Virus record (IMG/VR): IMGVR_UViG_3300004151_000006
Span: 124,001 to 188,000 of that record
DNA: 64,000 nt
Strand: one strand, 5' to 3'
Both the position numbers and the translations under genes were made by a program. The first letter of the stretch is position 1. Each line of letters starts with the position of its first letter. The notes beneath the pieces were generated by a model. The model was not told where the DNA came from and did not search any database. It worked only from the letters and a program-made list of their open reading frames with translations. Positions 1,191-60,452 of this stretch are shown one piece after another.

Positions 1191-1223
1191 ATAGCTCTGG
1201 GTGCACAGTGCACCCAGAGCTAT
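1191..1223. terminator. Perfect palindrome after the endolysin
   Basis: ATAGCTCTGGGTGCAC-A-GTGCACCCAGAGCTAT. Confidence 0.6.
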
Positions 1224-1238
1224 ATTCATCAATATTTT

Positions 1239-1251
1239 AAACATATATTAC
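1239..1251 (+). promoter_or_regulatory. Putative early promoter
   Basis: AAACATATATTAC, containing the phiKZ early motif TATATTAC. Confidence 0.65.
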
Positions 1252-1270
1252 ACAATAAGGAGGATAATAA

Positions 1271-1810
1271 ATGATCAAATATAAACACGGTGACATAGTT
1301 GAAGCACTGATTAAAACTACAGATATAGATGTATGTTTTCACCAAGCAAATTGTTTCTGCAATCTTGGAGCGGGCATAGCTAAACAATTAGCAGCTGTAT
1401 TTCCAGCATTGGTGGATGTAGATGATACTACTTCTGTAGGTGATAAAAATAAATTAGGTACATTTACGTATGCTGAATTTTATCAATCACATCAATTTAG
1501 AATCTACAATTTATATGGTCAATGGGCATTTAGATATGGTCTTATCTATAAATGGATAGATGGAGTAAAACATCAATTTACAATACCTGAAGAATATGAT
1601 GAAAATGGTCTTAAGCCCATGACTTCACTCCCGCATCTAAGACAGGCTATCGAAGGTATGATCAATCATGTCTGTGGTGTCAAACATGACTTAAGATTTG
1701 CTACAGTGAAGATTGGTGCTGGTCGTGGTGGTGCTGATTGGAATAGTCAAGTATATCCCATGCTAGAGGAATTGTTTGATGGTTTGGATTTGACAGTATA
1801 TAGATTTTAA
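1271..1810 (+). CDS. Macrodomain (ADP-ribose binding/hydrolase) protein
   Basis: GDI, HQANC..LGAGIAKQL, YNLYGQ and KIGAGRGGADW macrodomain motifs. Confidence 0.85.
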   Translation: MIKYKHGDIVEALIKTTDIDVCFHQANCFCNLGAGIAKQLAAVFPALVDVDDTTSVGDKNKLGTFTYAEFYQSHQFRIYNLYGQWAFRYGLIYKWIDGVKHQFTIPEEYDENGLKPMTSLPHLRQAIEGMINHVCGVKHDLRFATVKIGAGRGGADWNSQVYPMLEELFDGLDLTVYRF

Positions 1811-1861
1811 ATCAAGTATAAAGGAGAGCCTACTTATGAAGATTTTCATTGAGATTTTAAA

Positions 1862-2047
1862 ATGAAGAAAGATTATTTTTATTATAAACAGTTAGGATAT
1901 TGCACACAAGAACATTATTTCATGCGAGAATTGTTAATTATCAAAAATAAAGAATTTGAAAAATCACTGATATTTAATTTAATTGTATTGGGTTTAATAA
2001 TAATACTGATATGGTGTACAATTGATCTATTTATTTTAAAAAATTAA
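1862..2047 (+). CDS. Small membrane protein
   Basis: C-terminal hydrophobic helix LIFNLIVLGLIIILIWCTI. Confidence 0.4.
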   Translation: MKKDYFYYKQLGYCTQEHYFMRELLIIKNKEFEKSLIFNLIVLGLIIILIWCTIDLFILKN

Positions 2048-2149
2048 TAGTTTATCGGTTTTAAATCAACCATAAGAGGGAAAGTTAATAAAGGTGATCT
2101 ATAATAATTTAAGATTTTCATTGTGGAAATCCTGAATTGATCTAATGTA

Positions 2150-2184
2150 CCTATGATATGGGGGTTACACCCCCATATCATAGG
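2150..2184. terminator. Perfect hairpin overlapping the lipoprotein RBS
   Basis: CCTATGATATGGGGG-TTACA-CCCCCATATCATAGG. Confidence 0.55.
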
Positions 2185-2192
2185 AGGTCCAC

Positions 2193-2345
2193 ATGCGTTA
2201 TCTTCTTTTCATGTTGTTGGCCATGTTGATTAGCTGTCAAAAAGTCTCTATAGGTAAATTTGATTTGAAGTATGGTACTGGATCAGATACTTGGGAAAGT
2301 AATGAACGTGGAGATAGAGTCAAAAGACAAGATCATTGGCACTGA
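2193..2345 (+). CDS. Small lipoprotein (50 aa)
   Basis: Not in the ORF track. AGGAGG RBS; MRYLLFMLLAMLIS-CQKVSIGKFDLKYGTGSDTWESNERGDRVKRQDHWH with lipobox-like LISC. Confidence 0.6.
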   Translation: MRYLLFMLLAMLISCQKVSIGKFDLKYGTGSDTWESNERGDRVKRQDHWH

Positions 2346-2360
2346 TATTCATTTTATCTA

Positions 2361-2373
2361 GAATATATATTAT
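2361..2373 (+). promoter_or_regulatory. Putative early promoter
   Basis: GAATATATATTAT. Confidence 0.55.
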
Positions 2374-2993: not shown

Positions 2994-3383
2994 ATGCGCT
3001 ACATCTTTATGATCATCCTCATGCTGTGTACCACACAGCTGTATGCCCAGACCAGGACCCAGTCTGTGCAAGGCAAAGTGGTTCCCAACTTTAGCAACAA
3101 TTCTGTGGACATCTATACTCGTAGTGGCCAAAAGCAGACCGTCCCTCTCTATGGGGTGACTGTGGATCCCAAGAAGGCTGCTGCCGCTAACAAGACCTTC
3201 ATCGATAAACACAAGTCCCAGGACTATTCTAATGTCCGTATGTACACGGACAAATACGGCCAAAGCCGTGTTGAAGTAAATGGTCAAGATATTGGCCGTT
3301 CATTAACTTCAAAAAAATATGCTGTCCCCGATAGCCAATGTATTTCCAATCCCGGAAATCCATACTGTGCCAGATTGAAATAA
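2994..3383 (+). CDS. Secreted protein with degenerate thermonuclease (SNase)-like fold
   Basis: Signal peptide MRYIFMIILMLCTTQLYA; VPLYGV, TDKYGQ and VNGQDIGRSL..KKYAV echo SNase motifs VRLYGID/DRYGR/G.NVN..LV..G.A, but catalytic residues look absent. Confidence 0.5.
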   Translation: MRYIFMIILMLCTTQLYAQTRTQSVQGKVVPNFSNNSVDIYTRSGQKQTVPLYGVTVDPKKAAAANKTFIDKHKSQDYSNVRMYTDKYGQSRVEVNGQDIGRSLTSKKYAVPDSQCISNPGNPYCARLK

Positions 3384-3394
3384 TATTGATATAT

Positions 3395-3426
3395 GAGACA
3401 GTGGTACCAACAGGTACCACTGTCTC
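3395..3426. terminator. Perfect hairpin
   Basis: GAGACAGTGGTACC-AACA-GGTACCACTGTCTC. Confidence 0.55.
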
Positions 3427-3440
3427 TAAGGAGAATAAAT

Positions 3441-3638
3441 ATGATACACAGAAATGTTATTTGGTATCTGATTTATCTTTTTATATTGTTTGGGTGTTTC
3501 TTTGGTATAGCTTATAATACACAGATTGAACTTATTGGTGGTTCTGGAGTATTCTTAATTATCGGTGTTGGATTTTGTAGTCTTGAAATAGTGTCAGTAA
3601 TCATAAATTATATTTACAAGAAATTCAACCATGATTAA
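3441..3638 (+). CDS. Small two-TM membrane protein
   Basis: AAGGAG RBS before ATG 3441; two hydrophobic helices. Confidence 0.55.
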   Translation: MIHRNVIWYLIYLFILFGCFFGIAYNTQIELIGGSGVFLIIGVGFCSLEIVSVIINYIYKKFNHD

Positions 3639-4104
3639 ACTTAAATTTCCTTTGAGAGATCCAGTTTTAAGAGTCAATCCACAATATAATTACGTCTCAT
3701 ACAATATGGCAGATGCAATATTGTGTGATAATGATTTATTCAAAAGGAGTGTTGATATGGATGACTTCACATCAGAATATTCTATTGGATACTGGAAACA
3801 GTTTAAAGATGAAGATGTTGATTTACCTTGGCCAACAATAAATCCTGAATTGACAGATGAAATTAGAATGGATTATTTACGTTTACTTGATTTAGCTGAA
3901 AAAGATAAAGCTACTGCACATGAAAATTACAGAGGATGGTCTATGTGTCGATTGTGTAGAAAAGCGAATGGGATTGGTGAATTTGAAATGGTGATAGATG
4001 GTGTGTTGTATACCTGGCCTGATGGTTATCGACACTATATTGAAGATCATAAATGTGATATTGACTATAAATTTTATGAAGTGTTAAAAAAGAAATTTAG
4101 TTGA
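3631..4104 (+). CDS. Hypothetical protein with CxxC/His motif
   Basis: YRGWSMCRLC...YTWPDGYRHYIEDH; start overlaps the upstream stop. Confidence 0.65.
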   Translation: MIKLKFPLRDPVLRVNPQYNYVSYNMADAILCDNDLFKRSVDMDDFTSEYSIGYWKQFKDEDVDLPWPTINPELTDEIRMDYLRLLDLAEKDKATAHENYRGWSMCRLCRKANGIGEFEMVIDGVLYTWPDGYRHYIEDHKCDIDYKFYEVLKKKFS

Positions 4105-4109
4105 TTATC

Positions 4110-4141
4110 TAGCTAGGGTAGCCCATGGGCTACCCTAGCTA
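4110..4141. terminator. Loopless palindrome between convergent genes
   Basis: TAGCTAGGGTAGCCCATGGGCTACCCTAGCTA. Confidence 0.65.
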
Positions 4142-4687
4142 TCACTGATATGGGTGTGTATATTTTTTTCTATAGTCCCACCGATCTTTATATTTTTTAG
4201 CCACCTCTTCACTATAAATGAATATCACATTTTCACTATTTCGAGTACGTGCAGCGAATGACATATTGTAACTTCCAGTGAGTACTATTTTTTCATCGAA
4301 TATCATTACCTTATCGTGGGCTATAACGTACTTCGTATCTGAATATGTGGGGATACCCGCATGTTGTACTTCATCTGCCTGGGTACGATAGTGATCAGTT
4401 TGCCCGCCATCAATAATGAGTTGTACGTTCACACCACGTTTATGTGCCCGAATAAGTGCATTAGCTATATCTCTATCTGTAAATGAATATACTAATATAT
4501 AAATGGAAGTGTTGCTTTCATCAATGCGTTTAAGGATTTGTGTTATTACATCATCTTCTGGACTAAAATAAATCCACATTGGTGCAGTGATTATCTCACC
4601 ATGACTATATACTGGTGATACACACAACATCAATAACCACACACATATAATAAAGAGATTGAACAATATTCGTTCCATAAGTTTCAT
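4142..4687 (-). CDS. Phospholipase D-family (Nuc-like) endonuclease with N-terminal signal/TM segment
   Basis: Single HKD motif HDKVMIFDEKIVLTGSYN...NSEN; IYFSP; YSFT; GGAGG RBS before MKLMERILF; hydrophobic leader. Confidence 0.85.
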   Translation of the reverse strand: MKLMERILFNLFIICVWLLMLCVSPVYSHGEIITAPMWIYFSPEDDVITQILKRIDESNTSIYILVYSFTDRDIANALIRAHKRGVNVQLIIDGGQTDHYRTQADEVQHAGIPTYSDTKYVIAHDKVMIFDEKIVLTGSYNMSFAARTRNSENVIFIYSEEVAKKYKDRWDYRKKYTHPYQ

Positions 4688-4766
4688 TCTGTCCTCCAAA
4701 TTATATGTTAAAAGAATAACTCCACCCATACATATAGTCTTTAACATTTAAAAAGGAGTATCCATC

Positions 4767-5113: not shown

Positions 5114-5180
5114 TAATATGATCTTGTATTTGAAATCGTTCTTAACCTTTTCTAACCTTTAACCTAAAGGAGTATTCCGC

Positions 5181-5666
5181 ATGGAATTTACTTGCAATGA
5201 TCCGATCCGTGGTGACAAGATCGCCCAGCTCAGTGAGCGACTGGCCCTTGTACTCTACAAGCAGGAAGACGATGCCTATTTCCTCATTTCCGGCATCGTG
5301 ATCGGCAAGGCTGTCCAGCTTCGCTATGATGATGGGCCCGATGGCCATAATCGCATGTCGGTTAGTGTGGAGGATGATTCGATCATCCTCCATCGGTCCT
5401 CTGTCGAGTTTGAGGAATGTCGGCCCAATGTGAAAGGGGATAAGCGTCTGGCCAATATCCCCAAGCTGCTGCAGGGTACCACTGTCTGTGATCTCTTCGA
5501 TGAGGTCGATCAGGCCGTGGCGGAATATGTTCCTTTGATCAAAAACTCCGTGTGTTATAACAACAGCCAGGCATATCCTTACCTTCGGCCCATGGGCTTT
5601 CGTCCGGATTATTCCCAGCAAATGGGCGGTGGTGGTTTTCAGCATCGGCCCACCAGGCGCGGATAG
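5181..5666 (+). CDS. GC-rich early hypothetical protein
   Basis: Early promoter at 5101, AAGGAG RBS, hairpin at 5689; C/G-ending codons. Confidence 0.7.
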   Translation: MEFTCNDPIRGDKIAQLSERLALVLYKQEDDAYFLISGIVIGKAVQLRYDDGPDGHNRMSVSVEDDSIILHRSSVEFEECRPNVKGDKRLANIPKLLQGTTVCDLFDEVDQAVAEYVPLIKNSVCYNNSQAYPYLRPMGFRPDYSQQMGGGGFQHRPTRRG

Positions 5667-5688
5667 ACCATCCATTTAGCCTGCATAT

Positions 5689-5721
5689 CTGGAGCACACC
5701 CCATCATGGGGTGTGCTCCAG
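5689..5721. terminator. Palindrome between convergent genes
   Basis: CTGGAGCACACCCCAT-C-ATGGGGTGTGCTCCAG. Confidence 0.65.
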
Positions 5722-8305: not shown

Positions 8306-8436
8306 CAGGGAACTCCTTTATATTGATCCATATTATGGAAAGTTTTAGTATAAATAGACAATGTAACTAGATCCTTTTATGTATGGTTAAGATTGACGAT
8401 ACTATAGTCCTATCTACTTCAAAGGAGCATATCGCT

Positions 8437-8766: not shown

Positions 8767-8800
8767 TAGATAGGGATGGGCAAATGCCCATCCCTATCTA
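8767..8800. terminator. Perfect hairpin
   Basis: TAGATAGGGATGGGCA-AA-TGCCCATCCCTATCTA. Confidence 0.6.
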
Positions 8801-10459: not shown

Positions 10460-10497
10460 CATACAGTGGGTGTGGCCGATGCCACACCCACTGTATG
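10460..10497. terminator. Perfect hairpin
   Basis: CATACAGTGGGTGTGGC-CGAT-GCCACACCCACTGTATG. Confidence 0.6.
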
Positions 10498-10549
10498 GTA
10501 TTTATTTAAAGCTTTTTAAGAATACTAGATATGCAGATCATTTCATTAC

Positions 10550-12021: not shown

Positions 12022-12049
12022 GGGGTAGGGGCCACATGGCCCCTACCCC
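12022..12049. terminator. Hairpin between convergent genes
   Basis: GGGGTAGGGGCCA-CA-TGGCCCCTACCCC. Confidence 0.65.
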
Positions 12050-12736: not shown

Positions 12737-12768
12737 AGATGAGATGGGGATTTCTCCCCATCTCATCT
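12737..12768. terminator. Hairpin after the DNA polymerase subunit
   Basis: AGATGAGATGGGGA-TTTC-TCCCCATCTCATCT. Confidence 0.6.
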
Positions 12769-14492: not shown

Positions 14493-14526
14493 GGTACACC
14501 AGGCCCCAAAGGGGGCCTGGTGTACC
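14493..14526. terminator. Hairpin after MCP
   Basis: GGTACACCAGGCCCC-AAAG-GGGGCCTGGTGTACC. Confidence 0.65.
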
Positions 14527-20229: not shown

Positions 20230-20266
20230 CATAGATAGGTGGGTCATTTAGACCCACCTATCTATG
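20230..20266. terminator. Hairpin after DnaB
   Basis: CATAGATAGGTGGGTC-ATTTA-GACCCACCTATCTATG. Confidence 0.6.
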
Positions 20267-22891: not shown

Positions 22892-22990
22892 TCCACATTT
22901 CATATACATAAATATCTAGAGTCATCATCTTTTACACAGATACCTTGGATTGCATAAAGGTCACGTACCCCGTGTAGTCCAAGGTATCTT

Positions 22991-24275: not shown

Positions 24276-24309
24276 ACTAGAGGGTATCCCATGTGGGATA
24301 CCCTCTAGT
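24276..24309. terminator. Perfect hairpin
   Basis: ACTAGAGGGTATCCCA-TG-TGGGATACCCTCTAGT. Confidence 0.6.
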
Positions 24310-25324: not shown

Positions 25325-25352
25325 GATAGGGGACCCCACGGGGTCCCCTATC
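25325..25352. terminator. Hairpin between convergent genes
   Basis: GATAGGGGACCCC-AC-GGGGTCCCCTATC. Confidence 0.65.
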
Positions 25353-29277: not shown

Positions 29278-29309
29278 GATACAGTAGGACCTTATGGTCC
29301 TACTGTATC
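29278..29309. terminator. Hairpin after UvsX
   Basis: GATACAGTAGGACC-TTAT-GGTCCTACTGTATC. Confidence 0.6.
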
Positions 29310-33258: not shown

Positions 33259-33260
33259 AA

Positions 33261-33300
33261 TATATCCATGGGTGGGGAGCAATCCCCACCCATGGATATA
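33261..33300. terminator. Hairpin after the fibre gene
   Basis: TATATCCATGGGTGGGGA-GCAA-TCCCCACCCATGGATATA. Confidence 0.6.
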
Positions 33301-33358
33301 TAAAAATGTATCTAATATGTATCTCTTATGATTTCAAATACTACAGGAGGAAATCATT

Positions 33359-34069: not shown

Positions 34070-34099
34070 GATAGGGATGCCCCATGGGGCATCCCTATC
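34070..34099. terminator. Loopless palindrome between convergent genes
   Basis: GATAGGGATGCCCCATGGGGCATCCCTATC. Confidence 0.65.
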
Positions 34100-40140: not shown

Positions 40141-40167
40141 TAGGGTAGCCCATTATGGGCTACCCTA
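40141..40167. terminator. Palindrome, near-copy of the 4110 element
   Basis: TAGGGTAGCCCAT-T-ATGGGCTACCCTA. Confidence 0.6.
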
Positions 40168-40348: not shown

Positions 40349-40377
40349 GAGAGTAGAGGGTGATACCCTCTACTCTC
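40349..40377. repeat. Perfect hairpin inside a long intergenic region
   Basis: GAGAGTAGAGGGT-GAT-ACCCTCTACTCTC. Confidence 0.6.
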
Positions 40378-43371: not shown

Positions 43372-43400
43372 TAGAGGAGGAGGCTATGCCTCCTCCTCTA
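43372..43400. terminator. Perfect hairpin
   Basis: TAGAGGAGGAGGC-TAT-GCCTCCTCCTCTA. Confidence 0.6.
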
Positions 43401-43680: not shown

Positions 43681-43708
43681 GTGGAGGGTCCCCATGGGGA
43701 CCCTCCAC
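43681..43708. terminator. Loopless palindrome
   Basis: GTGGAGGGTCCCCATGGGGACCCTCCAC. Confidence 0.6.
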
Positions 43709-47155: not shown

Positions 47156-47186
47156 TGTTTTGGATATAAAAAAAGACAACAATCGT

Positions 47187-47220
47187 GCATAGTAGGAGGG
47201 AGATCTCCCTCCTACTATGC
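47187..47220. terminator. Loopless palindrome
   Basis: GCATAGTAGGAGGGAGATCTCCCTCCTACTATGC. Confidence 0.6.
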
Positions 47221-47247
47221 ACATTACCCATTTCATTTGGAGGAAAA

Positions 47248-48124: not shown

Positions 48125-48149
48125 GTGGAGGGGACAATGTCCCCTCCAC
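48125..48149. terminator. Palindrome between convergent genes
   Basis: GTGGAGGGGACA-A-TGTCCCCTCCAC. Confidence 0.65.
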
Positions 48150-51306: not shown

Positions 51307-51332
51307 GATGCCCCTGCACATGCAGGGGCATC
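51307..51332. terminator. Hairpin after chimallin
   Basis: GATGCCCCTGCA-CA-TGCAGGGGCATC. Confidence 0.6.
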
Positions 51333-51464: not shown

Positions 51465-53057
51465 TTGACAGTACCACATTATGCAGATATAAGCAAGGTA
51501 CCTAGTATTTATCATCATCTTAATCTTACTGAATTTGATCTAGATCCTCATGATGGTATCATGGATCGGATTCTTGATCTTGCACGTATTCTCACTCCTA
51601 TTGATTTTGAAAAACTATTTCAACAATCGCATAATGCGGGGATTATCAATCAGGGTCATCTGGTGGTAAAAAAGTTATCTGATGAATTCACTCGTGGTAT
51701 CTTTGCTGAATCAGATCAAGATGTACCATATCAACCACACTGTGAATGTAAAAAATTAAAAGGTCAGATGCACATAAATATGGTATGCCCCATTTGTAAT
51801 ACTAAAGTTTCCAATGAGTTTGTAGATCATTTATCACATGTAGCATGGTTGGGTATCCCCGATGGGCTTCCAAAAATGTTACATCCCGTTTGGTATCTAG
51901 TACTTAGAGATTGGCTTGGTGGTAAGAAAGGTGAATCATCTATCATTGATGCTATCTTAAATCCAGAATTGGAACTACCTAAAGATCTTAAAGCTATCAT
52001 CCCTGAACAAAGTTATATGTATTTTTATAATCATGCTGATGAAATTATGCAGGTATTGATGAATTTATATGAACCAACTAAACGAAAGAAATATACACCA
52101 TGGATTAAACGAATGTATCATGAATTTAAAGATATCATGTTTACCTCTAAGTTTCCAATTTTACACAATAGTTTACATCCATTTATGTCTGGTAGTTCCA
52201 CATTAAAATATGTAGATAAACCTTGTAAAGAGATCCTCAATGCTATCTTTGATCTTTCTGCTATTACATTTAGTTATCATACTCAATGGAAAGATAGATT
52301 GCTTACTGAAAAGAGAAAGAAAGAAATCAATAAAACACTTTATGATATTTACCGTAATGTTGTTGCATATTACATTGTGTTGATCAATGAGAAAGTTGGT
52401 AAGAAATCAGCTATCATGCGTAAACATAATTTTGGTACTCGAATGCATTTCACTATCAGATCAGTCGTAGTACCAATTACGGGTGCACATGATCCAGATG
52501 AAATTTATTTACCTTGGAAGTGTATAGTCAATGCCTATAAGTTGGAAATAATCGGAAGATTGGTAGATGATTATGGAATAGAAGCACCAAAAGCATATGT
52601 AAAACATCTTAATGCACTAGTGCATTATGATCCAATGATCCATGATATCATGCTCAAATTGATGAAGGAATGTCCATTTAAAGGTCTTCCTTTTCTCATA
52701 GGTAGAAATCCCACATTACGTTTATTTTCTATCATGCAATTGTTTTGTACTAAAATCAAAACAGATCTTCATGATCAGACTATTTCAATTTCTCCTCTGA
52801 TCCTTAAAGGAAGTAATACTGATTTTGATGGTGATGAATTAAATGGTGTCAATATCAAAGAAATGGCAGGTGTAATAGATATGGATACTATGCATCCAAG
52901 AGAAGCAGTACTGGATACGAATTCACCAAATGTATCCACATTGGTCATGCCATCAAATCAAGCATTACAAAATGCACACAGATTTGTACATCAAAATCCA
53001 GATATTGGTTATATCATTATGGGTGGTGGAAATACAGTCGGAGGTATGGCAGCATGA
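51465..53057 (+). CDS. Non-virion multisubunit RNA polymerase beta'-N subunit (phiKZ gp55-like), uninterrupted
   Basis: Zn finger CEC...CPIC, RKHNFGTRMHFTIRSVV, GRNPTL, catalytic NTDFDGDELN. Confidence 0.9.
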   Translation: MTVPHYADISKVPSIYHHLNLTEFDLDPHDGIMDRILDLARILTPIDFEKLFQQSHNAGIINQGHLVVKKLSDEFTRGIFAESDQDVPYQPHCECKKLKGQMHINMVCPICNTKVSNEFVDHLSHVAWLGIPDGLPKMLHPVWYLVLRDWLGGKKGESSIIDAILNPELELPKDLKAIIPEQSYMYFYNHADEIMQVLMNLYEPTKRKKYTPWIKRMYHEFKDIMFTSKFPILHNSLHPFMSGSSTLKYVDKPCKEILNAIFDLSAITFSYHTQWKDRLLTEKRKKEINKTLYDIYRNVVAYYIVLINEKVGKKSAIMRKHNFGTRMHFTIRSVVVPITGAHDPDEIYLPWKCIVNAYKLEIIGRLVDDYGIEAPKAYVKHLNALVHYDPMIHDIMLKLMKECPFKGLPFLIGRNPTLRLFSIMQLFCTKIKTDLHDQTISISPLILKGSNTDFDGDELNGVNIKEMAGVIDMDTMHPREAVLDTNSPNVSTLVMPSNQALQNAHRFVHQNPDIGYIIMGGGNTVGGMAA

Positions 53058-53707
53058 GTTATAGTTATACTCGCATTGAGCTTCCCAATAATGCTGCTAC
53101 CATTGGTCAACTCTTTGGAAATGTCTCTACATCAGATTGTTTGAAACAGATAGCTCAGAATTTTGGATATAATACTTCTTATTTTGGTAGTGATGCAGAT
53201 CCAACAAGAAATATGTATGCATATTTTCGTGAAGTCACATATGCACCATATCTTCAGACTGCTGAATGTTTTAAACAAGCAAATGCAATCATAGATAGAC
53301 AAGATGTATTTACACCAATCACTACAATAGAACAATTAAAAGAGGGTCCTCCCCCATGTATGTGGGTACCTATCTTGATGTATCCCCCAATGATGGAACT
53401 CCTTAAAGATGAAAAGATCTGTGGATATGGATATGATCCTAATAGTTTTCCTGAAGTAGATCCTGATCCTTATGGTAGATTGATCAACAATGGTACTATT
53501 CAATTGATCAATGATAATACAGTGTTTAATGATAAAAATGATCCCAATGCATTTTATGTTGAAGAAGTGTATACTACATACGATCCTAAAGTGACTGAGG
53601 ATGAACTCAATGCATTAGAGAAAACTAGGAAGTTTTTGGATATGTTCATGACTGCTGAAGATACCATGTATTTGGATCCAACGAATCCATTTGAGTTAAG
53701 GGGCTAA
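53054..53707 (+). CDS. Conserved jumbo-phage protein (possible phiKZ gp59/Imp3 position)
   Basis: Overlaps the RNAP stop; C-terminal DPT motif; assignment from synteny only. Confidence 0.5.
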   Translation: MSYSYTRIELPNNAATIGQLFGNVSTSDCLKQIAQNFGYNTSYFGSDADPTRNMYAYFREVTYAPYLQTAECFKQANAIIDRQDVFTPITTIEQLKEGPPPCMWVPILMYPPMMELLKDEKICGYGYDPNSFPEVDPDPYGRLINNGTIQLINDNTVFNDKNDPNAFYVEEVYTTYDPKVTEDELNALEKTRKFLDMFMTAEDTMYLDPTNPFELRG

Positions 53708-53711: not shown

Positions 53712-53737
53712 TGGGGAGCTAGATATCTAGCTCCCCA
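53712..53737. terminator. Loopless palindrome
   Basis: TGGGGAGCTAGATATCTAGCTCCCCA. Confidence 0.6.
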
Positions 53738-55285: not shown

Positions 55286-55317
55286 TGGATAGGGGACCCA
55301 TTTGGGTCCCCTATCCA
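55286..55317. terminator. Perfect hairpin, near-copy of the 25325 element
   Basis: TGGATAGGGGACCCA-TT-TGGGTCCCCTATCCA. Confidence 0.6.
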
Positions 55318-55841: not shown

Positions 55842-56600
55842 ATGACAAAACCAGACTTTGGTGATCTTAGAGCACCACGTGGTAGAGAACGTGATTTGGA
55901 AAATATGGTAACACATTTCAGAAAATTACAAAATTCATTAATCATATTTACTGAATCTGAATTTAGTAAATACACACCAATTTATATGGCTGAATATAGA
56001 AAGGAAGTATCTGAATATACACCAAGTGAATTGGAATTTATTGCAAACTTATCTAAAGAGTTTCATTCTAGAATTGATCTTTATAAACCAACATATGTTG
56101 TGAGTGATCAATTAACACCTATCCAAAAAGAACTTCAACTCAGTAGAACAAACCATGAACAAATATTCACTGCTGGGGAAAAATTATATATCTATTTTGG
56201 AAATAACATACTTAGAGAAGTACTCTTTATTCTTCCAGAAATACAACAACCTTTTAGTTCACTTAAAACCACTGAAGCTAAAGAAGCTGTTGACATTTGT
56301 CAAAATATTACAGCTAATGCACATGATCAGCCATGGAAAGTCTCTGAAGCAGTGAATAATTTAGCGCACCATATGTTTGCTTCTCAAGATATGGATCAGA
56401 CCGTAATTAATGGTAAGAATTTTATGCAACATGTGATCAAGCTTCATAACTCAAAATATTTCAATACTAAGATCACTGCATCTGGAAAATTAGAATATAA
56501 ACAAGATAACTCTGTTATACCAACAATAAATCCTACAACTACTCCAATAGATAAAGTTGATAAAAAAGGAGATGTGTCATTAGACGATCTTTTTGATTAA
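55842..56600 (+). CDS. Hypothetical protein ending in DDLFD
   Basis: AAGGAG RBS; core block before SbcD. Confidence 0.65.
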   Translation: MTKPDFGDLRAPRGRERDLENMVTHFRKLQNSLIIFTESEFSKYTPIYMAEYRKEVSEYTPSELEFIANLSKEFHSRIDLYKPTYVVSDQLTPIQKELQLSRTNHEQIFTAGEKLYIYFGNNILREVLFILPEIQQPFSSLKTTEAKEAVDICQNITANAHDQPWKVSEAVNNLAHHMFASQDMDQTVINGKNFMQHVIKLHNSKYFNTKITASGKLEYKQDNSVIPTINPTTTPIDKVDKKGDVSLDDLFD

Positions 56601-56616
56601 GGAGGGTCAATATCTT

Positions 56617-57759
56617 GTGATTAAACAACTTTATATATCTGATCTTCATTTTGGAAAATCTAGGATAGATCCAATACGATTAAGAGAGACTTTATTAGAA
56701 GAAATAGCTAAAGAGATAGAGGATGTTCAAATCATATTTTTTTGTGGTGATATGTTTAATCAGATGTTATTTTTAGATCATCCTGCAGCATATCAAGCTA
56801 TATTGTTTATTACTGGAGTATTGCATTTAGCTAAACAACACAATGTGATAGTGAGATTTTTGCGTGGTACATATACCCATGACAGGGAACAACAGAGAAT
56901 TATTGATGGTCTCGGTATCCAGGGTGTAAACTATCGAGTCATCAATGAAATTTATGTGGAAACTATTAGTGATTGGAATAATAATGATACTGGTAAATTG
57001 AAAATACTCTATTTACCAGATTCATTACCATACAGAAACATTATTCAGATCTATAATAAAATTAAAGAGCTTTATACTTTAGTTGGTTGGGATAAATGTG
57101 ATTTGATCATTGGACATGGGGCATTTAGTCATTGTTTTCCTGAACATATAAAACTTCCACCGTGTGTTTATACAGTGAATGACATAAATCAATTTGTTAG
57201 TGGGTATGTGGTCATGGGGCATATACATACTCCCAGTAAAAAAGAAAATGTCATATATGTGGGTAGTTTTGAACGTATGTCCCATGGTGAAGAAGAAAAG
57301 AAAGGATATTTGATTGGTTATAAAGATCAAGATCATTGGAAATTTAAATTCAAAGAAAACAAACAGGCCACACTCTTTATCACCATGTATCCGAAAGAAC
57401 ATACAAAAGAAAATCTCCTTAATGAGGTCTATCAATTTATTGAAAATAAGTTTCCTAATCAGACTGGATATCTTCGTATTATACACCATGATCCAGAATT
57501 TAAATCTATCATTTTAAACATCTGTTATCAAAAATATCCAAACATTAAGATTACCTTTAAAAATGATACTACACATAAATCTGAAATGGAATTAGATGAA
57601 TGTGATATTGATGCTACTTTAGAAGTAGATACTTTATCAATAGAAAATATAGCAGCACATATAACTGATGTATTGGCTAAAGATAGTATTTATGGAACAT
57701 ATCACTATGGATATGATGAAATACGAAATACATTAGAAATATTATCTTTGAAAAAATAG
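56617..57759 (+). CDS. sbcD: SbcD/Mre11-like metallophosphoesterase nuclease
   Basis: SDLHFG, CGDMF, RGTYTHD, IGHG, MGHIH, YVGSF.R.SHGEE; GGAGG RBS before GTG 56617. Confidence 0.9.
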   Translation: MIKQLYISDLHFGKSRIDPIRLRETLLEEIAKEIEDVQIIFFCGDMFNQMLFLDHPAAYQAILFITGVLHLAKQHNVIVRFLRGTYTHDREQQRIIDGLGIQGVNYRVINEIYVETISDWNNNDTGKLKILYLPDSLPYRNIIQIYNKIKELYTLVGWDKCDLIIGHGAFSHCFPEHIKLPPCVYTVNDINQFVSGYVVMGHIHTPSKKENVIYVGSFERMSHGEEEKKGYLIGYKDQDHWKFKFKENKQATLFITMYPKEHTKENLLNEVYQFIENKFPNQTGYLRIIHHDPEFKSIILNICYQKYPNIKITFKNDTTHKSEMELDECDIDATLEVDTLSIENIAAHITDVLAKDSIYGTYHYGYDEIRNTLEILSLKK

Positions 57760-57769
57760 GAGATAGATT

Positions 57770-58615
57770 ATGGATTTAGAAAATATTAACAATGTTGCTG
57801 GGGATGGGAGCTTTGGATTAGCTCCCATCCTCAATATGTTTTCCACACATGCCAATAATAAAAATAGGCCAAAATGGGATCTTTATGTAGTCAACATGCT
57901 TACACTTATTAGAAATAATCAACAAAAAGGAAAACAACTATCGGTACTTATTAATAATACTATTAGAGATGCAGAGTTACTTATTACACATATTGAAAAT
58001 TATGTGGAGTTGGATAAATTAAGTCTTAGTCAACCGACACTTATTATTTATATACCTTTTTATCAAATACCACAATTATATGTGAAAAAGATTTCACCAT
58101 CTTTAGTTGAACAACAATTGGCTTGTGATAAAATACGGAATCAATTGAAACCAAGAGTCTATACTCAAGGTAGCCTTACCATCCATGTGGTGTATGTTGG
58201 TAGTAATAGATCTACTCCAAAATGTGAATTAATCAATTATATCAATGCACAGATATCCAATAGTTATAAGTTTAAACGCACTGCTATCATTTCACATATT
58301 GCTATGGATCTACATCTTTTTCAAGATATAGTTGAGATTATATTGATTGAATGCTTTACAGGTAAACTTAAAAAGAGTAATGTGTTTAATGAAAAAGTCT
58401 TTAATACAAAAGAACTTCCATTTCATCCTTACATACATTTACTATTGGGTGACAATACTTTTATTAAACGAACACTTAAGAAAAAACAATATGATGAATT
58501 ATTGGCTTTTGCAAAATCACATTCTTGGAAGTATCGACCTACCGTCCTCATAGAGAAGGATCTTCTCTCCATGAAGTTAGTGGAAGATAAGCACTTCTTT
58601 GAATATAAACTTTAA
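57770..58615 (+). CDS. Conserved jumbo-phage protein (phiKZ gp66 position)
   Basis: VNMLTLIRN, ISH...DL, LIECFTG, LLGD; synteny. Confidence 0.55.
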   Translation: MDLENINNVAGDGSFGLAPILNMFSTHANNKNRPKWDLYVVNMLTLIRNNQQKGKQLSVLINNTIRDAELLITHIENYVELDKLSLSQPTLIIYIPFYQIPQLYVKKISPSLVEQQLACDKIRNQLKPRVYTQGSLTIHVVYVGSNRSTPKCELINYINAQISNSYKFKRTAIISHIAMDLHLFQDIVEIILIECFTGKLKKSNVFNEKVFNTKELPFHPYIHLLLGDNTFIKRTLKKKQYDELLAFAKSHSWKYRPTVLIEKDLLSMKLVEDKHFFEYKL

Positions 58616-58638
58616 CACCCATACCGTGGGGAAGGAGC

Positions 58639-59256
58639 ATGATCTTTATGTCTGATGCACCCAATTATAATAATTTGTGGTCTACCACTTCACGTGAAAA
58701 GGATCAAAAGAATTCTAATCAGTTGTCATTTGGTGTATTTAATCGTATTGCTGGTTTTTCTGTCTTTATGGGTGATAGTCCTGGACGTCCGAAATTTAAA
58801 CACTCTCTCAATAATGAAAGTATTGTACTTCTGGAAGAATACATTGATACTTTGCTTAATGCTAAAGGTGAACATAAAGAATATTTGATTTCTACCAAAT
58901 ACAACATGGAAACTAAACAATCAGAAAAGATCTCTCAGATCACATTTATTCGTGATGAAAAAGGTATCTTTCATATCGAATGCTACAATAAAGAATTAGG
59001 TAGTCCGGTGATGTTCACTCTTCGATCTACGACTACATACACTACTGGTGGAGATGGTATCTCTGTTGCTAAAAAATCTGAACTTGCTATGAAGAGTCTT
59101 AAGAAAACCTTGCAGGATATCAATTTAGCTAAGTGGAATTCTCCTGCTATGGCACCCAATCGTAATGGTGGTGGTAAGTTTGGTGGAAACAATGGTAGTA
59201 ATAGTTCTGGTAGTGGTGGTAGTAAACCCAGTGGTGGTGATGATCTGTTCGATTGA
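58639..59256 (+). CDS. Conserved protein with Gly/Ser linker and acidic DDLFD tail (phiKZ gp67 position; SSB-like architecture)
   Basis: NGGGKFGGNNGSNSSGSGGSKPSGGDDLFD. Confidence 0.55.
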   Translation: MIFMSDAPNYNNLWSTTSREKDQKNSNQLSFGVFNRIAGFSVFMGDSPGRPKFKHSLNNESIVLLEEYIDTLLNAKGEHKEYLISTKYNMETKQSEKISQITFIRDEKGIFHIECYNKELGSPVMFTLRSTTTYTTGGDGISVAKKSELAMKSLKKTLQDINLAKWNSPAMAPNRNGGGKFGGNNGSNSSGSGGSKPSGGDDLFD

Positions 59257-59270
59257 TCATAGATCGGATG

Positions 59271-59297
59271 TAGAGGAGACCCAATGGGTCTCCTCTA
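59271..59297. terminator. Perfect hairpin
   Basis: TAGAGGAGACCCA-A-TGGGTCTCCTCTA. Confidence 0.6.
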
Positions 59298-59321
59298 TGT
59301 ACTGTGTTTCATCATGAGAAT

Positions 59322-59334
59322 AAATATATATTAC
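59322..59334 (+). promoter_or_regulatory. Putative early promoter
   Basis: AAATATATATTAC. Confidence 0.7.
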
Positions 59335-59384
59335 ATTTATGATGTGACTTGGATAAATGTCTATTTTAAACAGGAGGATGATGT

Positions 59385-60410
59385 GTGATGTCCGTCCCAC
59401 AAAGGAAATTGGGACAATTGCAGGATGAACCCCAATTTGAGAATTGTTTTGTTGAACACTTTTATACGAGTCAAAACATAGTACCATTGGGGTATGTCGT
59501 ACTGCGGTTGTTTGATGAAATGACCACATTAGCTAGTCTTTATCCACAGATACCTAAAATTATACGTAATGGTACAAATGCAAAATATCAAGAAGATTTT
59601 CTCTATCTTTGTGGAAAACGATCACGGAATGTGTTGGGTATTCAAAGTAAAATTTGTATAGTAGTTGCACCCTATGAAACAACATTACATGATGTACAGT
59701 GTGATTATTTACTGATCATTGGTGGAAAAAAGGTACATATTAAAAATAGTAATATTAATAGTTTATTCATTTATGGTACTGAACAGGTGATTGTAGAAAA
59801 TGTGACTATCATTGATACATTTATTGATATTTCAAATACTTTAGAGATGCGTGGAGATTATTTTCATTGTGATCTTAATTATATTACTGTAAAAAATCTC
59901 ATTACTAACAATATTGACATTGTTAAAGATGCATTTTATTTATTGGGGCTTACCAATGTGAACTTAAATAAAACAAGTCCAAAGATGTTAGAACAATTTC
60001 CAAATATGTATTTGTGTTCGATGGAATACTCAAATAAAATTGTAGTGTTTAAGTTATCACCCACTATGATACATCTTAGATTCATGTGGCTTATATGGGC
60101 AATGTGGAATGTAGATCATTTTGATATTGATATTACACAAAGCCATTTGACACTGTTGGAAAGTAAATCTATTAATAATAGTCCAAATTATCTTCGTATG
60201 TCCAGATATCTTCATGAACGTAATCCTTATTATCAATATTTTTATAACAAAATGGTTAGTATCAATATGCATCTTTCTGATAGTGAAATTAATATATTTG
60301 AAGAAAGTACTAATAGATGTAATACTACTTCATTTGATTTGGTACCCCAGATATTCACATCACGTGTAGATTCTAGTATTAAATCAAAGTATTTAATAAA
60401 ATCCGTATAA
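59385..60410 (+). CDS. Early protein with beta-solenoid-like region
   Basis: Promoter at 59322, AGGAGG RBS, hairpin at 60415. Confidence 0.6.
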   Translation: MMSVPQRKLGQLQDEPQFENCFVEHFYTSQNIVPLGYVVLRLFDEMTTLASLYPQIPKIIRNGTNAKYQEDFLYLCGKRSRNVLGIQSKICIVVAPYETTLHDVQCDYLLIIGGKKVHIKNSNINSLFIYGTEQVIVENVTIIDTFIDISNTLEMRGDYFHCDLNYITVKNLITNNIDIVKDAFYLLGLTNVNLNKTSPKMLEQFPNMYLCSMEYSNKIVVFKLSPTMIHLRFMWLIWAMWNVDHFDIDITQSHLTLLESKSINNSPNYLRMSRYLHERNPYYQYFYNKMVSINMHLSDSEINIFEESTNRCNTTSFDLVPQIFTSRVDSSIKSKYLIKSV

Positions 60411-60414
60411 TGTA

Positions 60415-60452
60415 GGATGCATACGGGAGCTCTAGAGCTCCCGTATGCATCC
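60415..60452. terminator. Loopless 38-bp palindrome
   Basis: GGATGCATACGGGAGCTCTAGAGCTCCCGTATGCATCC. Confidence 0.6.

What the first reader, a model, noticed from the sequence alone, without database searches (positions are those of the whole stretch)
1191..60452. Window-wide system of 27 perfect, nearly loopless GC-rich palindromes at transcription-unit ends
Seen: 27 intergenic inverted repeats with 12-19 bp arms, strict Watson-Crick symmetry and 0-5 nt loops (six have no loop), in otherwise AT-rich DNA. Nearly all lie shortly after a stop codon, including six convergent junctions (4110, 5689, 12022, 25325, 34070, 48125), and many precede an early promoter. Most lack the adjacent U-tract of classical intrinsic terminators. 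Arm sequences vary, but many share a loose grammar: TAGRGG...CCCA(N0-3)TGGG...CCYCTA. Inference: selection for perfect symmetry on both strands suggests more than a host-type terminator. Possibilities are a phage-RNAP-specific bidirectional termination or 3'-processing signal (analogous to the Mimivirus hairpin rule), an mRNA export mark for the chimallin nucleus, or DNA cruciform/REP-like protein-binding sites.
Basis: partly seen in the sequence, partly recalled or inferred. Interest (0 to 1): 0.8.

Follow-up and report, generated by a model that had tools for sequence, protein, structure and literature searches.

The report
Tail-less palindromic terminator hairpins, jumbo phage
The 27 perfect GC-rich palindromes are real and are most likely the transcript-end (terminator) hairpins of an uncultured phiKZ-like giant phage that carries its own RNA polymerase; they are a longer, symmetric version, without a U-tail, of a signal already known from phiKZ, EL and AR9.

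Summary
Observation confirmed. The window (part of a 287-kb freshwater-metagenome phage contig) holds exactly 27 perfect palindromes with 12-19 bp arms and 0-5 nt loops, against 0.07 expected by chance. All are intergenic, at a median of 14 nt after a stop codon. They occupy 6 of 8 convergent, 19 of 51 codirectional and 0 of 7 divergent junctions, and have no U-tract.

Interpretation partly supported. The phage encodes a phiKZ-type non-virion RNA polymerase. About 50 relatives carry the same kind of element at 2-6 per 10 kb. The position is conserved (after the capsid gene in 41 of 49) while the sequence turns over. Stems evolve by compensatory double changes and loops evolve freely. Across the clade the tails are directionally U-rich, and the rare G·U pairs favour the sense strand. 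These are features of an RNA transcript-end signal, not of a DNA cruciform or protein site.

phiKZ's mapped terminators are also short, almost perfect palindromes. AR9 and EL carry long ones, and in AR9 they coincide with strong termination. So this is a new variant of a known kind. What is distinctive here is the length, 27 of 28 strong hairpins being perfect, the G-rich 5′ arm and the missing tail. No RNA data exist for this phage, so termination and 3′-end stabilisation cannot be told apart.

The parts
1191..1223 (.). Perfect palindrome, 16-bp arms, loop 1. Codirectional (+): 72 nt after the endolysin-like gene 372-1118, 47 nt before 1271. ATATATTA at 1243.
   Evidence: (-26.6 kcal/mol)
2150..2184 (.). 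Perfect palindrome, 16-bp arms, loop 3. Codirectional (+): 102 nt after 1862-2047, 8 nt before 2193.
3395..3426 (.). Perfect palindrome, 14-bp arms, loop 4. 11 nt after 2994-3383 (+).
   Evidence: the ORF 3393-3638 that overlaps it scores as non-coding
4110..4141 (.). Perfect loopless palindrome, 16-bp arms. It fills the convergent junction between 3631-4104 (+) and 4142-4747 (-), with gaps of 5 and 0 nt.
5689..5721 (.). Perfect palindrome, 16-bp arms, loop 1. 22 nt after the SbcC-like gene 5744-8305 (-). Convergent if 5181-5666 (+) is the real gene.
8767..8800 (.). Perfect palindrome, 16-bp arms, loop 2. Starts immediately after the stop of 8383-8766 (+). One of three with a T-rich tail.
10460..10497 (.). 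Perfect palindrome, 17-bp arms, loop 4. 28 nt after the GC3-rich gene 9910-10431 (+). T-rich tail.
12022..12049 (.). Perfect palindrome, 13-bp arms, loop 2 (75% GC). Convergent junction between 10470-12014 (+) and 12054-12611 (-), with gaps of 7 and 4 nt.
12737..12768 (.). Perfect palindrome, 14-bp arms, loop 4. Abuts the stop of the DNA polymerase gene 12768-14420 (-).
14493..14526 (.). Perfect palindrome, 15-bp arms, loop 4. 52 nt after the major capsid gene 14579-16924 (-). T-rich tail on the - strand. The position is conserved in 41 of 49 relatives.
20230..20266 (.). Perfect palindrome, 16-bp arms, loop 5. 12 nt after the DnaB-like helicase gene 18604-20217 (+).
22939..22988 (+). The only other strong gene-end hairpin in the window. 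It is imperfect: 11-bp perfect outer arms with an interior containing G.U pairs. -26.6 kcal/mol on the sense (+) strand against -19.7 on the - strand. It follows 20324-22891 (+) and is followed by ATATATTA at 22995.
24276..24309 (.). Perfect palindrome, 16-bp arms, loop 2. 26 nt after the GC3-rich gene 23008-24249 (+).
25325..25352 (.). Perfect palindrome, 13-bp arms, loop 2. Convergent junction between 24400-25323 (+) and 25357-26424 (-), with gaps of 1 and 4 nt.
29278..29309 (.). Perfect palindrome, 14-bp arms, loop 4. 14 nt after 29324-30727 (-) and 16 nt before the start of 28197-29261 (-).
33260..33301 (.). Perfect palindrome, 19-bp arms, loop 4 (-35.2 kcal/mol). 1 nt after 31234-33258 (+).
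34070..34099 (.). Perfect loopless palindrome, 15-bp arms. Convergent junction between 33359-34066 (+) and 34105-34656 (-), with gaps of 3 and 5 nt.
40141..40167 (.). Perfect palindrome, 13-bp arms, loop 1. 15 nt after 39388-40125 (+). First of two hairpins in a 339-nt intergenic region.
40349..40377 (.). Perfect palindrome, 13-bp arms, loop 3. Second hairpin of the same intergenic region, 87 nt before 40465 (+).
43372..43400 (.). Perfect palindrome, 13-bp arms, loop 3. 5 nt after the virion-protein gene 42056-43366 (+).
43681..43708 (.). Perfect loopless palindrome, 14-bp arms. Second hairpin of the 43367-43784 intergenic region (the ORF 43460-43711 (-) scores as non-coding). 76 nt before 43785 (+).
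47185..47222 (.). Perfect loopless palindrome, 19-bp arms. 29 nt after 46739-47155 (+).
48125..48149 (.). Perfect palindrome, 12-bp arms, loop 1. Convergent junction between 47185-48102 (+) and 48156-49316 (-), with gaps of 22 and 6 nt.
51307..51332 (.). Perfect palindrome, 12-bp arms, loop 2. 18 nt after the GC3-rich gene 49414-51288 (+) and 132 nt before the nvRNAP beta' gene.
53712..53737 (.). Perfect loopless palindrome, 13-bp arms. 4 nt after 53054-53707 (+).
55286..55317 (.). Perfect palindrome, 15-bp arms, loop 2. 9 nt after 53774-55276 (+). Shares 12 nt of its arm with 25325.
59271..59297 (.). Perfect palindrome, 13-bp arms, loop 1. 14 nt after 58639-59256 (+). ATATATTA at 59326.
60415..60452 (.). 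Perfect loopless palindrome, 19-bp arms. 4 nt after 59385-60410 (+). ATATATTA at 60468.
51465..53057 (+). Gene for a homologue of the phiKZ gp55 / AR9 non-virion RNA polymerase beta' subunit. It is the inferred enzyme, or one of the enzymes, that reads these signals.
   Evidence: 7OGP_A, E 2.8e-37

Best explanation
The palindromes are the transcript-end signals of this phage. When transcribed they fold into very stable RNA hairpins (12-19 bp, -21 to -35 kcal/mol) just after the stop codon. These hairpins end, or define the 3' end of, transcripts made by the phage's own phiKZ-type multisubunit RNA polymerases. A perfect palindrome gives the same hairpin whichever strand is transcribed. One element can therefore serve both genes at a convergent junction, and at codirectional junctions it can also block antisense read-through. 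In this lineage the usual U-rich tail is missing. I infer that the AU-rich base of the long stem takes over its role: the GC-rich top nucleates, and the stem then zips down through a weak hybrid. Shown: the existence, placement, conservation and pairing-constrained evolution of the elements, and the presence of the phage polymerase. Inferred: that RNA 3' ends form there, that the phage polymerase and not the host's is the responder, and how release happens.
For: (1) Placement. The median is 14 nt from stop to hairpin, then 69 nt to the next start. Codirectional junctions without a hairpin have a median gap of 10.5 nt. Occupancy in the window is 6 of 8 convergent, 19 of 51 codirectional and 0 of 7 divergent junctions. 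In 37 representative loci it is 65%, 28% and 10%.
(2) Every one of the six strongly codon-biased genes (GC3 0.55-0.77, capsid included) is directly followed by a hairpin.
(3) The feature is clade-wide. There are 2-6 per 10 kb in relatives down to 27% capsid identity, and one lies after the capsid stop in 41 of 49 relatives with unrelated sequences.
(4) Evolution is constrained on pairing, not on sequence. Substitutions per site are 0.35 in loops, 0.115 in flanks and 0.086 in arms. Interior stem columns are 371 invariant, 37 covarying, 5 G.T, 6 A.C and 11 other mismatches. The two apical pairs behave as loop.
(5) Direction-specific RNA signatures appear across the clade. TTTT is found downstream on the sense strand in 41 of 133 against 10 of 133 mirrored, and YTAT in 70 against 48, p = 0.01. 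G.U mismatches are 10 on the sense strand against 3 antisense and 6 against 2 in orthologues. The capsid hairpin of L006 has a sense-strand U.G and a U-rich tail. The window's one imperfect hairpin is 7 kcal/mol more stable on the sense strand.
(6) The phage encodes a phiKZ gp55-like nvRNAP beta' subunit.
(7) There is precedent. phiKZ has 133 mapped termination sites, and 61 share a short stem-loop motif (PMC10914365). Those hairpins are near-perfect, often loopless palindromes, and the one at a convergent gene pair is symmetric. 201phi2-1 has 132 sites, 15 of them bidirectional (PMC11512511). AR9 carries long perfect palindromes at 22 per 50 kb, and termination is strong at its predicted terminators (PMC5312081).
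Against: No RNA 3'-end data exist for this phage. No RNA run holding it was listed, and the reads laid were fragments of distant relatives. The window's hairpins lack the U-tract that bacterial and T7-type polymerases need for intrinsic termination. Hairpin-only release is therefore an assumption, and a hairpin without a tail might only pause the polymerase or protect a 3' end. Five of the 19 codirectional hairpins leave 25 nt or less before the next start codon, which is too little room for a promoter. Some hairpins may therefore act inside operons. The sense-strand G.U bias rests on small, partly overlapping counts. No paper I found tests termination by phiKZ-type polymerases biochemically.
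Confidence: 0.72

Rival explanations
1. The hairpins do not release the polymerase. They are RNA 3'-end stability or processing elements. Transcripts run on, 3'-to-5' exonucleases trim back to the stable stem (or a double-strand-specific RNase cuts it), and the hairpin protects the upstream mRNA. Chloroplast 3' inverted repeats and bacterial REP elements work this way.
For: There is no U-tract in this window. The stems are far more stable than termination usually requires (-21 to -35 kcal/mol). Five hairpins lie 25 nt or less before the next start codon. Every highly codon-biased, presumably abundant, gene has one. Placement, covariation and sense-strand bias fit this reading as well as termination.
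Against: Hairpin junctions carry about 100 nt of extra spacer, and some carry a promoter-like motif, as expected where a new transcription unit starts. In phiKZ, 201phi2-1 and AR9 the analogous elements coincide with coverage drops that the authors call termination, and eight elements from 201phi2-1 terminate in a reporter assay. The clade-wide directional U-rich tail is a termination feature, not a stability feature.
Confidence: 0.17
2. The palindromes act as DNA: as cruciforms or as symmetric binding sites for a dimeric phage protein involved in genome organisation, replication, packaging or a REP-like mobile family.
For: Watson-Crick symmetry on both strands is strict (255 perfect against 28 imperfect in the clade). 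Six are loopless. The phage encodes SbcC- and SbcD-like nuclease subunits. Some arms share 10-12 nt.
Against: None of the 7 divergent junctions in the window has one, and only 10% do across the clade, against 65% of convergent junctions. They hug stop codons. There is no common consensus, and the sequence turns over completely at conserved positions. The centre of symmetry is not conserved, because apical pairs mutate freely and loops of 0-8 nt interchange. Tails and G.U pairs are strand-directional across the clade. Arm polarity flips between lineages. SbcCD homologues are also annotated in 201phi2-1, which has only short palindromes.
Confidence: 0.04
3. The hairpins are recognition marks for exporting mRNA from a chimallin-type phage nucleus.
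For: The phage is phiKZ-like, and its relatives uncouple transcription from translation. A structured tag that is the same in every mRNA would be a convenient handle. This is inference only.
Against: Only 27 hairpins serve about 66 genes, so many transcripts would lack the mark. No shell gene was identified in the window. The one known export-associated RNA binder, ChmC, gives eCLIP peaks near start codons with no detectable motif (bioRxiv 10.1101/2023.09.22.559000). AR9 has equally dense palindromes; whether AR9 forms a chimallin nucleus I did not check.
Confidence: 0.03
4. The perfection is mainly mutational. Palindromes arise, or are re-homogenised, in one step by intrastrand template switching during replication (quasi-palindrome correction). 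Selection acts only on having some hairpin.
For: 90% of clade hairpins are perfect although the stems have stability to spare. Sequence turns over rapidly at conserved positions. Many have very short or zero spacers. At one site (L077 17445) the relatives keep the 5' arm (13 of 16) better than the 3' arm (8-9 of 16).
Against: Only that one site family shows arm asymmetry. Arms evolve about four times more slowly than loops, which ordinary purifying selection plus compensatory change explains. The idea addresses how perfection arises, not what the elements do, so it complements the main explanation more than it competes with it.
Confidence: 0.1

Closest known systems
phiKZ / 201phi2-1 conserved terminator hairpins (ONT-cappable-seq; PMC10914365, PMC11512511)
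   Same: Both occur in phages with phiKZ-type virion and non-virion multisubunit RNA polymerases. Both are short-looped or loopless, almost strictly Watson-Crick palindromes placed just after stop codons. Both serve two genes at convergent junctions. Both have a lineage-specific sequence flavour.
   Different: phiKZ arms are 7-11 bp, with none >=12 in 50 kb. Their 5' arm is C-rich (CCYCCCC...GGGRRGG) and a conserved TTAT follows. Here the arms are 12-19 bp, the 5' arm is G-rich (G:C 154:78), there is no TTAT or U tail, and no single consensus.
Gene-end palindromes of Bacillus phage AR9 and Pseudomonas phage EL
   Same: They are long perfect palindromes at similar density: AR9 22 and EL 8 per 50 kb with arms >=12, up to 21 and 17 bp, and several in AR9 are loopless. 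AR9 RNA-seq shows strong termination at the predicted terminators (PMC5312081).
   Different: AR9 arms are AT-rich, with A-rich 5' and T-rich 3' ends that build the U-tract into the palindrome. EL arms are C-rich on the 5' side with TTAT or GTAT tails. I did not check which individual AR9 or EL palindromes are the published terminators.
Canonical bacterial intrinsic (Rho-independent) terminators, including bidirectional ones
   Same: A GC-rich hairpin shortly after the stop codon, with conserved arms and a fast-evolving spacer (general pattern in PMC13155455). Symmetric versions serve convergent genes.
   Different: The defining U-tract of 7-9 nt is absent. The stems are about twice the usual length and almost never contain G.U pairs, mismatches or bulges (27 of 28 perfect). 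IR density is about 14.7 bp per kb against a bacterial mean of 3.14.
Chloroplast mRNA 3' inverted repeats and bacterial REP elements (3'-end stabilisers)
   Same: Stable stem-loops without a U-tract downstream of coding regions. The comparison rests on my general knowledge of these systems.
   Different: REPs are families of near-identical imperfect repeats linked to RAYT transposases. Here each element has its own sequence. Whether these act by stabilisation is untested.
Mimivirus 'hairpin rule'
   Same: Palindromes after most genes of a giant virus with its own transcription machinery.
   Different: In that system the hairpin is a cleavage and polyadenylation signal of a eukaryote-infecting virus. 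Nothing here indicates polyadenylation, and only about 40% of genes are followed by a hairpin.

Membership tests
Canonical intrinsic (Rho-independent) terminator | GC-rich RNA stem-loop at the end of a transcription unit | tested here: met
   All 27 fold at -21 to -35 kcal/mol. Median 14 nt after a stop codon. 6 of 8 convergent and 0 of 7 divergent junctions occupied.
Canonical intrinsic (Rho-independent) terminator | U-tract of about 7-9 nt immediately 3' of the stem | tested here: not met
   Hairpin+T-run sites number 11 against 10.0 expected, and only 3 of the palindromes qualify. TTTT downstream in 1 of 20. T fraction is 0.385 downstream against 0.35 for the mirrored A.
Canonical intrinsic (Rho-independent) terminator | RNA 3' ends / polymerase release at the site | not testable with these tools
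   No RNA run holding this phage was listed. The laid contigs were fragments of relatives.
phiKZ-type phage terminator motif | Host genome is a phage encoding phiKZ-type multisubunit RNA polymerases | tested here: met
   51465-53057 matches phiKZ gp55 (7OGP_A, E 2.8e-37) and AR9 nvRNAP beta'. phiKZ-type capsid.
phiKZ-type phage terminator motif | Consensus BCCYCCCC-HWWD-GGGRRGG followed by TTAT | tested here: not met
   The 5' arms are G-rich (G 154, C 78 of 402). TTAT occurs downstream in 2 of 20 against 3 of 20 mirrored. There is no single consensus.
phiKZ-type phage terminator motif | Near-perfect, short-loop palindrome after stop codons, shared by convergent genes | tested here: met
   Window. 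phiKZ benchmark: 9 of 15 perfect, 134 WC / 5 G.U / 1 mismatch, with a symmetric site between gp86 and gp87.
REP / BIME-like repeated extragenic palindromes | Many near-identical copies of one consensus sequence | tested here: not met
   Only 3 arm pairs share 9 nt or more. Orthologous positions carry unrelated sequences.
REP / BIME-like repeated extragenic palindromes | Associated RAYT/Y1 transposase | tested here: inconclusive
   None appeared among the roughly 40 larger proteins scanned against PHROGs or Pfam, but only 64 of 287 kb was examined.
DNA cruciform / symmetric protein-binding site | Function independent of the direction of transcription; conserved dyad centre or recognition sequence | tested here: not met
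   Absent from divergent junctions. Apical pairs and loops are free to vary. Tails and G.U pairs are directional in the clade.
DNA cruciform / symmetric protein-binding site | Extrusion or protein binding on duplex DNA | not testable with these tools
   Needs nuclease probing or footprinting.
Mimivirus-type hairpin rule | Hairpin-directed cleavage followed by polyadenylation | not testable with these tools
   No transcript data.

The most novel reading that the evidence does not exclude
In this lineage the long, perfectly symmetric hairpins without a tail are a hairpin-only, orientation-independent termination signal. They would be read by phage multisubunit RNA polymerases that work without host factors such as Rho or NusA. 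That would be a release mechanism different from the hairpin-plus-U-tract rule of bacterial and T7-type enzymes. The lineage-specific arm polarity would then reflect co-evolution with the polymerase.
Probability: 0.3. Interest if true: 0.65.

Novelty: new variant of a known kind. Interest (0 to 1): 0.4.

Why it matters
In the papers I read, the way phiKZ-type virion and non-virion RNA polymerases terminate had not been tested biochemically. If this phage forms a nucleus-like compartment as phiKZ does, these enzymes work away from host termination factors, so the signal would have to be self-sufficient; that is inference. This phage and its roughly 50 uncultured relatives provide a natural series. 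It runs from phiKZ-like short hairpins with a TTAT tail, through long hairpins with U-rich tails, to this genome's long, perfectly symmetric hairpins with no tail. That series gives defined templates for asking what a minimal, bidirectional, factor-independent terminator for these polymerases needs. In practice the elements mark transcription-unit ends in unannotated jumbo-phage contigs. They could be tried as compact bidirectional insulators. They also break short-read assemblies of relatives. If they prove to be ordinary terminators for the host polymerase as well, the finding is simply a good annotation.

Tried and rejected
(1) Direct transcript evidence. No RNA run holding the window was listed. 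The two wastewater RNA-seq runs found with the capsid gene hold only short fragments of relatives, and one is flagged as probably DNA. The read-laying run showed no transcript ends. Its only use was as a control: a 43-kb DNA contig of the source sample passes through the palindromes.
(2) Near-identical or cultured relatives. There is no megablast or tblastn match in the phage collection for a 12-kb stretch, an 855-aa protein or the capsid. Only the DNA polymerase finds phiKZ-like phages, at about 32% identity.
(3) Rfam gave 0 hits and tRNA search 0 genes.
(4) TATATTAC as an 'early promoter': 9 against 6.4 expected, not significant. ATATATTA is not enriched window-wide either (17 against 15). 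Only its concentration in upstream regions is notable.
(5) TCTTTWTATA: 5 against 1.3 expected, but only two of the hits are intergenic.
(6) The 'born perfect by template switching' test had too few informative sites.
(7) Resolving the strand of 5142-5675 against 5181-5666 by homology found no homologues in the fetched loci or in Pfam.
(8) The supplementary terminator tables of the phiKZ and 201phi2-1 papers are not held. I therefore could not place mapped 3' ends relative to the hairpins.
(9) Searching for a shell protein among the three largest unannotated proteins found no PDB or Pfam match. Whether this phage forms a nucleus is not established here.
(10) The three weaker palindromes (arms 10-11) lie inside ORFs and are not counted as part of the system.

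Full report
WHAT THE WINDOW IS. The 64-kb window is part of a 286,688-bp IMG/VR contig, with a twin 60.9-kb contig. The sequencing runs that hold it are freshwater metagenomes. It encodes a phiKZ-type major capsid protein at 14579-16924(-) (Pfam PF25620). The DNA polymerase at 12768-14420(-) is about 32% identical to phiKZ gp82. There is a DnaB-like helicase, SbcC-like and SbcD-like nuclease subunits and an endolysin-like protein. The gene at 51465-53057 is a clear homologue of the phiKZ gp55 / AR9 non-virion RNA polymerase beta' subunit (7OGP_A, E 2.8e-37). The genome is therefore an uncultured, distant phiKZ-like jumbo phage with its own multisubunit RNA polymerase. It has no close relative in the GenBank phage collection. 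I did not find a nuclear-shell gene in the window, so 'chimallin nucleus' is an assumption.

Dinucleotide-preserving shuffles give 0.07 such repeats. All 27 are intergenic, although about 92% of the window is coding. Three weaker repeats (arms 10-11) lie inside ORFs and are not part of the system. As RNA the 27 fold at -21 to -35 kcal/mol, with effective loops of 3-5 nt, because loopless palindromes open their innermost pairs. No U-tract follows them. Classical hairpin-plus-T-run sites are at chance level (11 against 10.0), and TTTT occurs downstream of 1 hairpin in 20. An energy-based scan of every junction without a palindrome found only one more strong hairpin, at 22939-22988. It is imperfect and 7 kcal/mol more stable on the sense strand. 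So 27 of the 28 strong gene-end hairpins in this window are perfect.

PLACEMENT POINTS TO TRANSCRIPT ENDS. Hairpins start a median of 14 nt after a stop codon and are followed by a median of 69 nt before the next start. Codirectional junctions without a hairpin have a median gap of 10.5 nt, as inside operons. In the window 6 of 8 convergent, 19 of 51 codirectional and 0 of 7 divergent junctions carry one (two gene calls are uncertain). At convergent junctions the palindrome fills almost the whole gap between the two stop codons. Six genes have a strikingly different codon usage (GC3 0.55-0.77 against about 0.2-0.3), and the capsid gene is one of them. Each of the six is directly followed by a hairpin.

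THE FEATURE BELONGS TO A WHOLE CLADE AND EVOLVES LIKE A STRUCTURE. A capsid alignment retrieved 75 loci from metagenomic and viral contig collections, including copies of the window and duplicates, plus five from exact-protein look-ups. Perfect palindromes with arms >=12 occur at about 2-6 per 10 kb in nearly all of them, down to 27% capsid identity. A perfect palindrome lies within 200 nt after the capsid stop codon, usually 14-55 nt away, in 41 of 49 loci, and its sequence is unrelated between lineages. A census that allowed isolated mismatches found 255 perfect hairpins, 22 with one mismatch and 6 with two. Of the perfect ones, 132 are at codirectional junctions, 80 at convergent ones and 15 at divergent ones. 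In 37 representative loci the occupancy is 65% of convergent, 28% of codirectional and 10% of divergent junctions. Between orthologous sites, substitutions per site are 0.35 in loops, 0.115 in flanks and 0.086 in arms. Most arm changes are compensatory doubles (136 double-change cells against 58 G.T or A.C and 50 other). Counted per orthologous group on unique alleles, interior stem columns are 371 invariant, 37 with two or more Watson-Crick types, 5 G.T, 6 A.C and 11 other mismatches. The two apical pairs show 28 non-Watson-Crick states against 2 covarying columns. A clean example is L007 against L008, where one stem carries an A-T to G-C double change and the neighbouring 4-nt loop has three changes. 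Selection therefore acts on pairing, the sequence is free, and looplessness itself is not conserved.

RNA OR DNA? Four results favour an RNA-level, direction-aware role. First, divergent junctions are avoided. Second, tails across the clade are directional: T is 0.48 downstream on the sense strand against 0.38 for the mirrored A. TTTT occurs in 41 of 133 against 10 of 133, and YTAT in 70 against 48 (p = 0.01). Third, the rare mismatches at codirectional sites are all of the transition type and favour G.U on the sense strand (10 against 3; 6 against 2 among orthologues; the two counts are small and not independent). Fourth, the closest relative with flanking sequence (L006, 67% capsid identity) has a 16-bp capsid hairpin with one sense-strand U.G and an AUUUUCUUA tail. 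A DNA cruciform or a symmetric protein site predicts none of these, and there is no common recognition sequence. The arms do share more sequence than composition alone predicts: 18 pairs share >=7 nt against 2.6 expected, and three pairs share 10-12 nt. The 5' arms are G-rich, with C clustered next to the loop. This polarity is lineage-specific: strongly G-rich 5' arms here and in the L042 and L082 groups, and strongly C-rich in the L007/L011 and L080 groups.

COMPARISON WITH WHAT IS KNOWN. ONT-cappable-seq mapped 133 termination sites in phiKZ. Sixty-one of them share a stem-loop motif (C-rich arm, short loop, G-rich arm, then TTAT), and six regions are bidirectional (PMC10914365). 201phi2-1 has 132 sites, 15 of them bidirectional, with a similar motif, and eight tested elements terminate in a reporter assay (PMC11512511). 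In 50 kb of phiKZ I find those hairpins to be 7-11 bp and often loopless. They are almost strictly Watson-Crick (134 WC, 5 G.U, 1 mismatch), and the site between convergent genes has symmetric tails. Strict symmetry is therefore not special to this window. Long perfect palindromes also occur in cultured relatives. AR9 has 22 per 50 kb with arms >=12 (up to 21 bp, several loopless). EL has 8 (up to 17 bp, with TTAT or GTAT tails). phiKZ, 201phi2-1 and SPN3US have none. For AR9 the authors report strong termination at the ends of all predicted operons, at the predicted terminators (PMC5312081). A survey of 118,019 genomes found that perfect inverted repeats peak just after stop codons, with conserved arms and fast-evolving spacers (PMC13155455). 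This window's density, about 14.7 IR bp per kb, is several times the bacterial mean of 3.14.

WHAT IS DISTINCTIVE HERE. Within its clade this genome stands out in four ways. Its arms are long (12-19 bp), 27 of 28 strong hairpins are perfect, the 5' arm is G-rich, and the tail is missing in both directions (TTTT 1 against 1 and YTAT 5 against 5 of 20). If the hairpins release the polymerase, they do it without a U-tract. My inference is that the AU-rich base of the long stem substitutes for the tail. The outer arm positions are rich in A and T, for example in the recurrent GATAG...CTATC ends. I did not test this idea.

MOST LIKELY MECHANISM AND RIVALS. I put 0.72 on transcript-end RNA hairpins that terminate phage-polymerase transcription and are symmetric so that they work in both directions. 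I put 0.17 on their acting only as 3'-end stabilisers or processing sites. The missing tail, the very high stability and the five hairpins within 25 nt of the next start codon keep that rival alive. DNA-level roles (0.04) and an export mark (0.03) are poorly supported. ChmC, the known export-associated RNA binder, crosslinks near start codons and no motif was detected. A mutational contribution to the perfection, through template-switch homogenisation, is possible but untested, since only one informative site family was found.

LIMITS. There are no transcript data for this phage or for any close relative. Gene calls in the relatives are crude longest-ORF calls, which probably explains most of the 'divergent' cases. 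The covariation cells are not phylogenetically independent. The published termination-site tables were not available. In the papers I read, termination by phiKZ-type polymerases had not been tested in vitro.

VERDICT. The system is best filed as the terminator (transcript-end) hairpins of a phiKZ-like phage. It is a new variant of a known kind, with one open mechanistic question: termination without a tail.

Noticed in passing
window 5142-5675, 9910-10431, 10470-12014, 14579-16924, 23008-24249, 49414-51288: Six genes, the major capsid gene among them, have a very different codon usage from the rest of the window: GC3 0.55-0.77 and gene GC 0.48-0.59, against GC3 of about 0.2-0.3. They almost completely avoid TTA, CTA and TCA (1 in 781 codons in the capsid gene). 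This leaves codon-aligned 'shadow' ORFs open on the opposite strand, for example 763 aa opposite the capsid gene. The likely cause is strong translational selection on highly expressed genes, but such a two-class split inside one phage genome is unusual.
   Followed up: partly
window 40126-40464 and 43367-43784: Two long intergenic regions each hold two perfect hairpins. In the first, each hairpin is followed by the same TCTTTATATAG string (40210 and 40400). This suggests a short non-coding transcription unit of about 150 nt that ends at the second hairpin. The region folds better than shuffles (z = -5.5), largely because of the two hairpins. There is no Rfam match.
   Followed up: partly
window 1243, 2365, 5105, 9725, 22995, 45948, 49401, 59326, 60468 (+ strand): ATATATTA is not enriched in the window as a whole (17 against 15 expected). 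However, 9 of its 17 copies lie in intergenic DNA, upstream of and in the orientation of the next gene, 13-185 nt before the start codon. It is a candidate phage promoter core of the AT-rich kind described for virion-RNAP promoters of jumbo phages (PMC7598289). Four of the six GC3-rich genes have it. Its temporal class is unknown.
   Followed up: partly
window 5744-8305 (-) and 56593-57759 (+): The phage encodes SbcC-like and SbcD-like subunits of the hairpin/palindrome-specific nuclease family while carrying hundreds of short perfect palindromes. The same genes are annotated in 201phi2-1, which has only short palindromes, so this is probably an ordinary recombination nuclease.
   Followed up: no
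L005 3238 (contig end); L006 1-24 and 7374-7395 (both contig ends): Short-read assembly contigs of relatives stop at palindromes. L005 (90% capsid identity) ends about 50 nt after the capsid stop, where the window's hairpin begins. Both ends of L006 are half-palindromes. Perfect palindromes probably fragment de Bruijn-graph assemblies of these phages, although the source sample's own 43-kb contig reads through them.
   Followed up: partly
loci L007/L011, L042/L077, L080, L082 versus the window: Arm polarity is lineage-specific. Summed G minus C in the 5' arms is +21 in L010, a 22-kb copy of the window region around the capsid gene. It is -30 and -36 in L007 and L011, +38 in L042, -49 in L080 and +47 in L082. 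Because a perfect palindrome reads the same on both strands, this is a real property of the element. It may track the polymerase or a mutational bias.
   Followed up: no
L077 17445-17484 versus L042/L043/L060/L061/L078: At one orthologous site only L077 has a perfect 16-bp palindrome. The relatives keep the 5' arm (10-13 of 16) better than the 3' arm (8-9 of 16). This is compatible with the 3' arm having been created in one step by inverted copying. It is a single case.
   Followed up: partly
window 5368-5392, 46355-46382, 57802-57830, 52606-52631: Three shorter perfect repeats (arms 10-11, loops 3-8) and one 12-pair repeat with a T.T mismatch lie inside ORFs. About one repeat with arms >=10 is expected by chance, so one or two of these might be real internal elements.
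   Followed up: no
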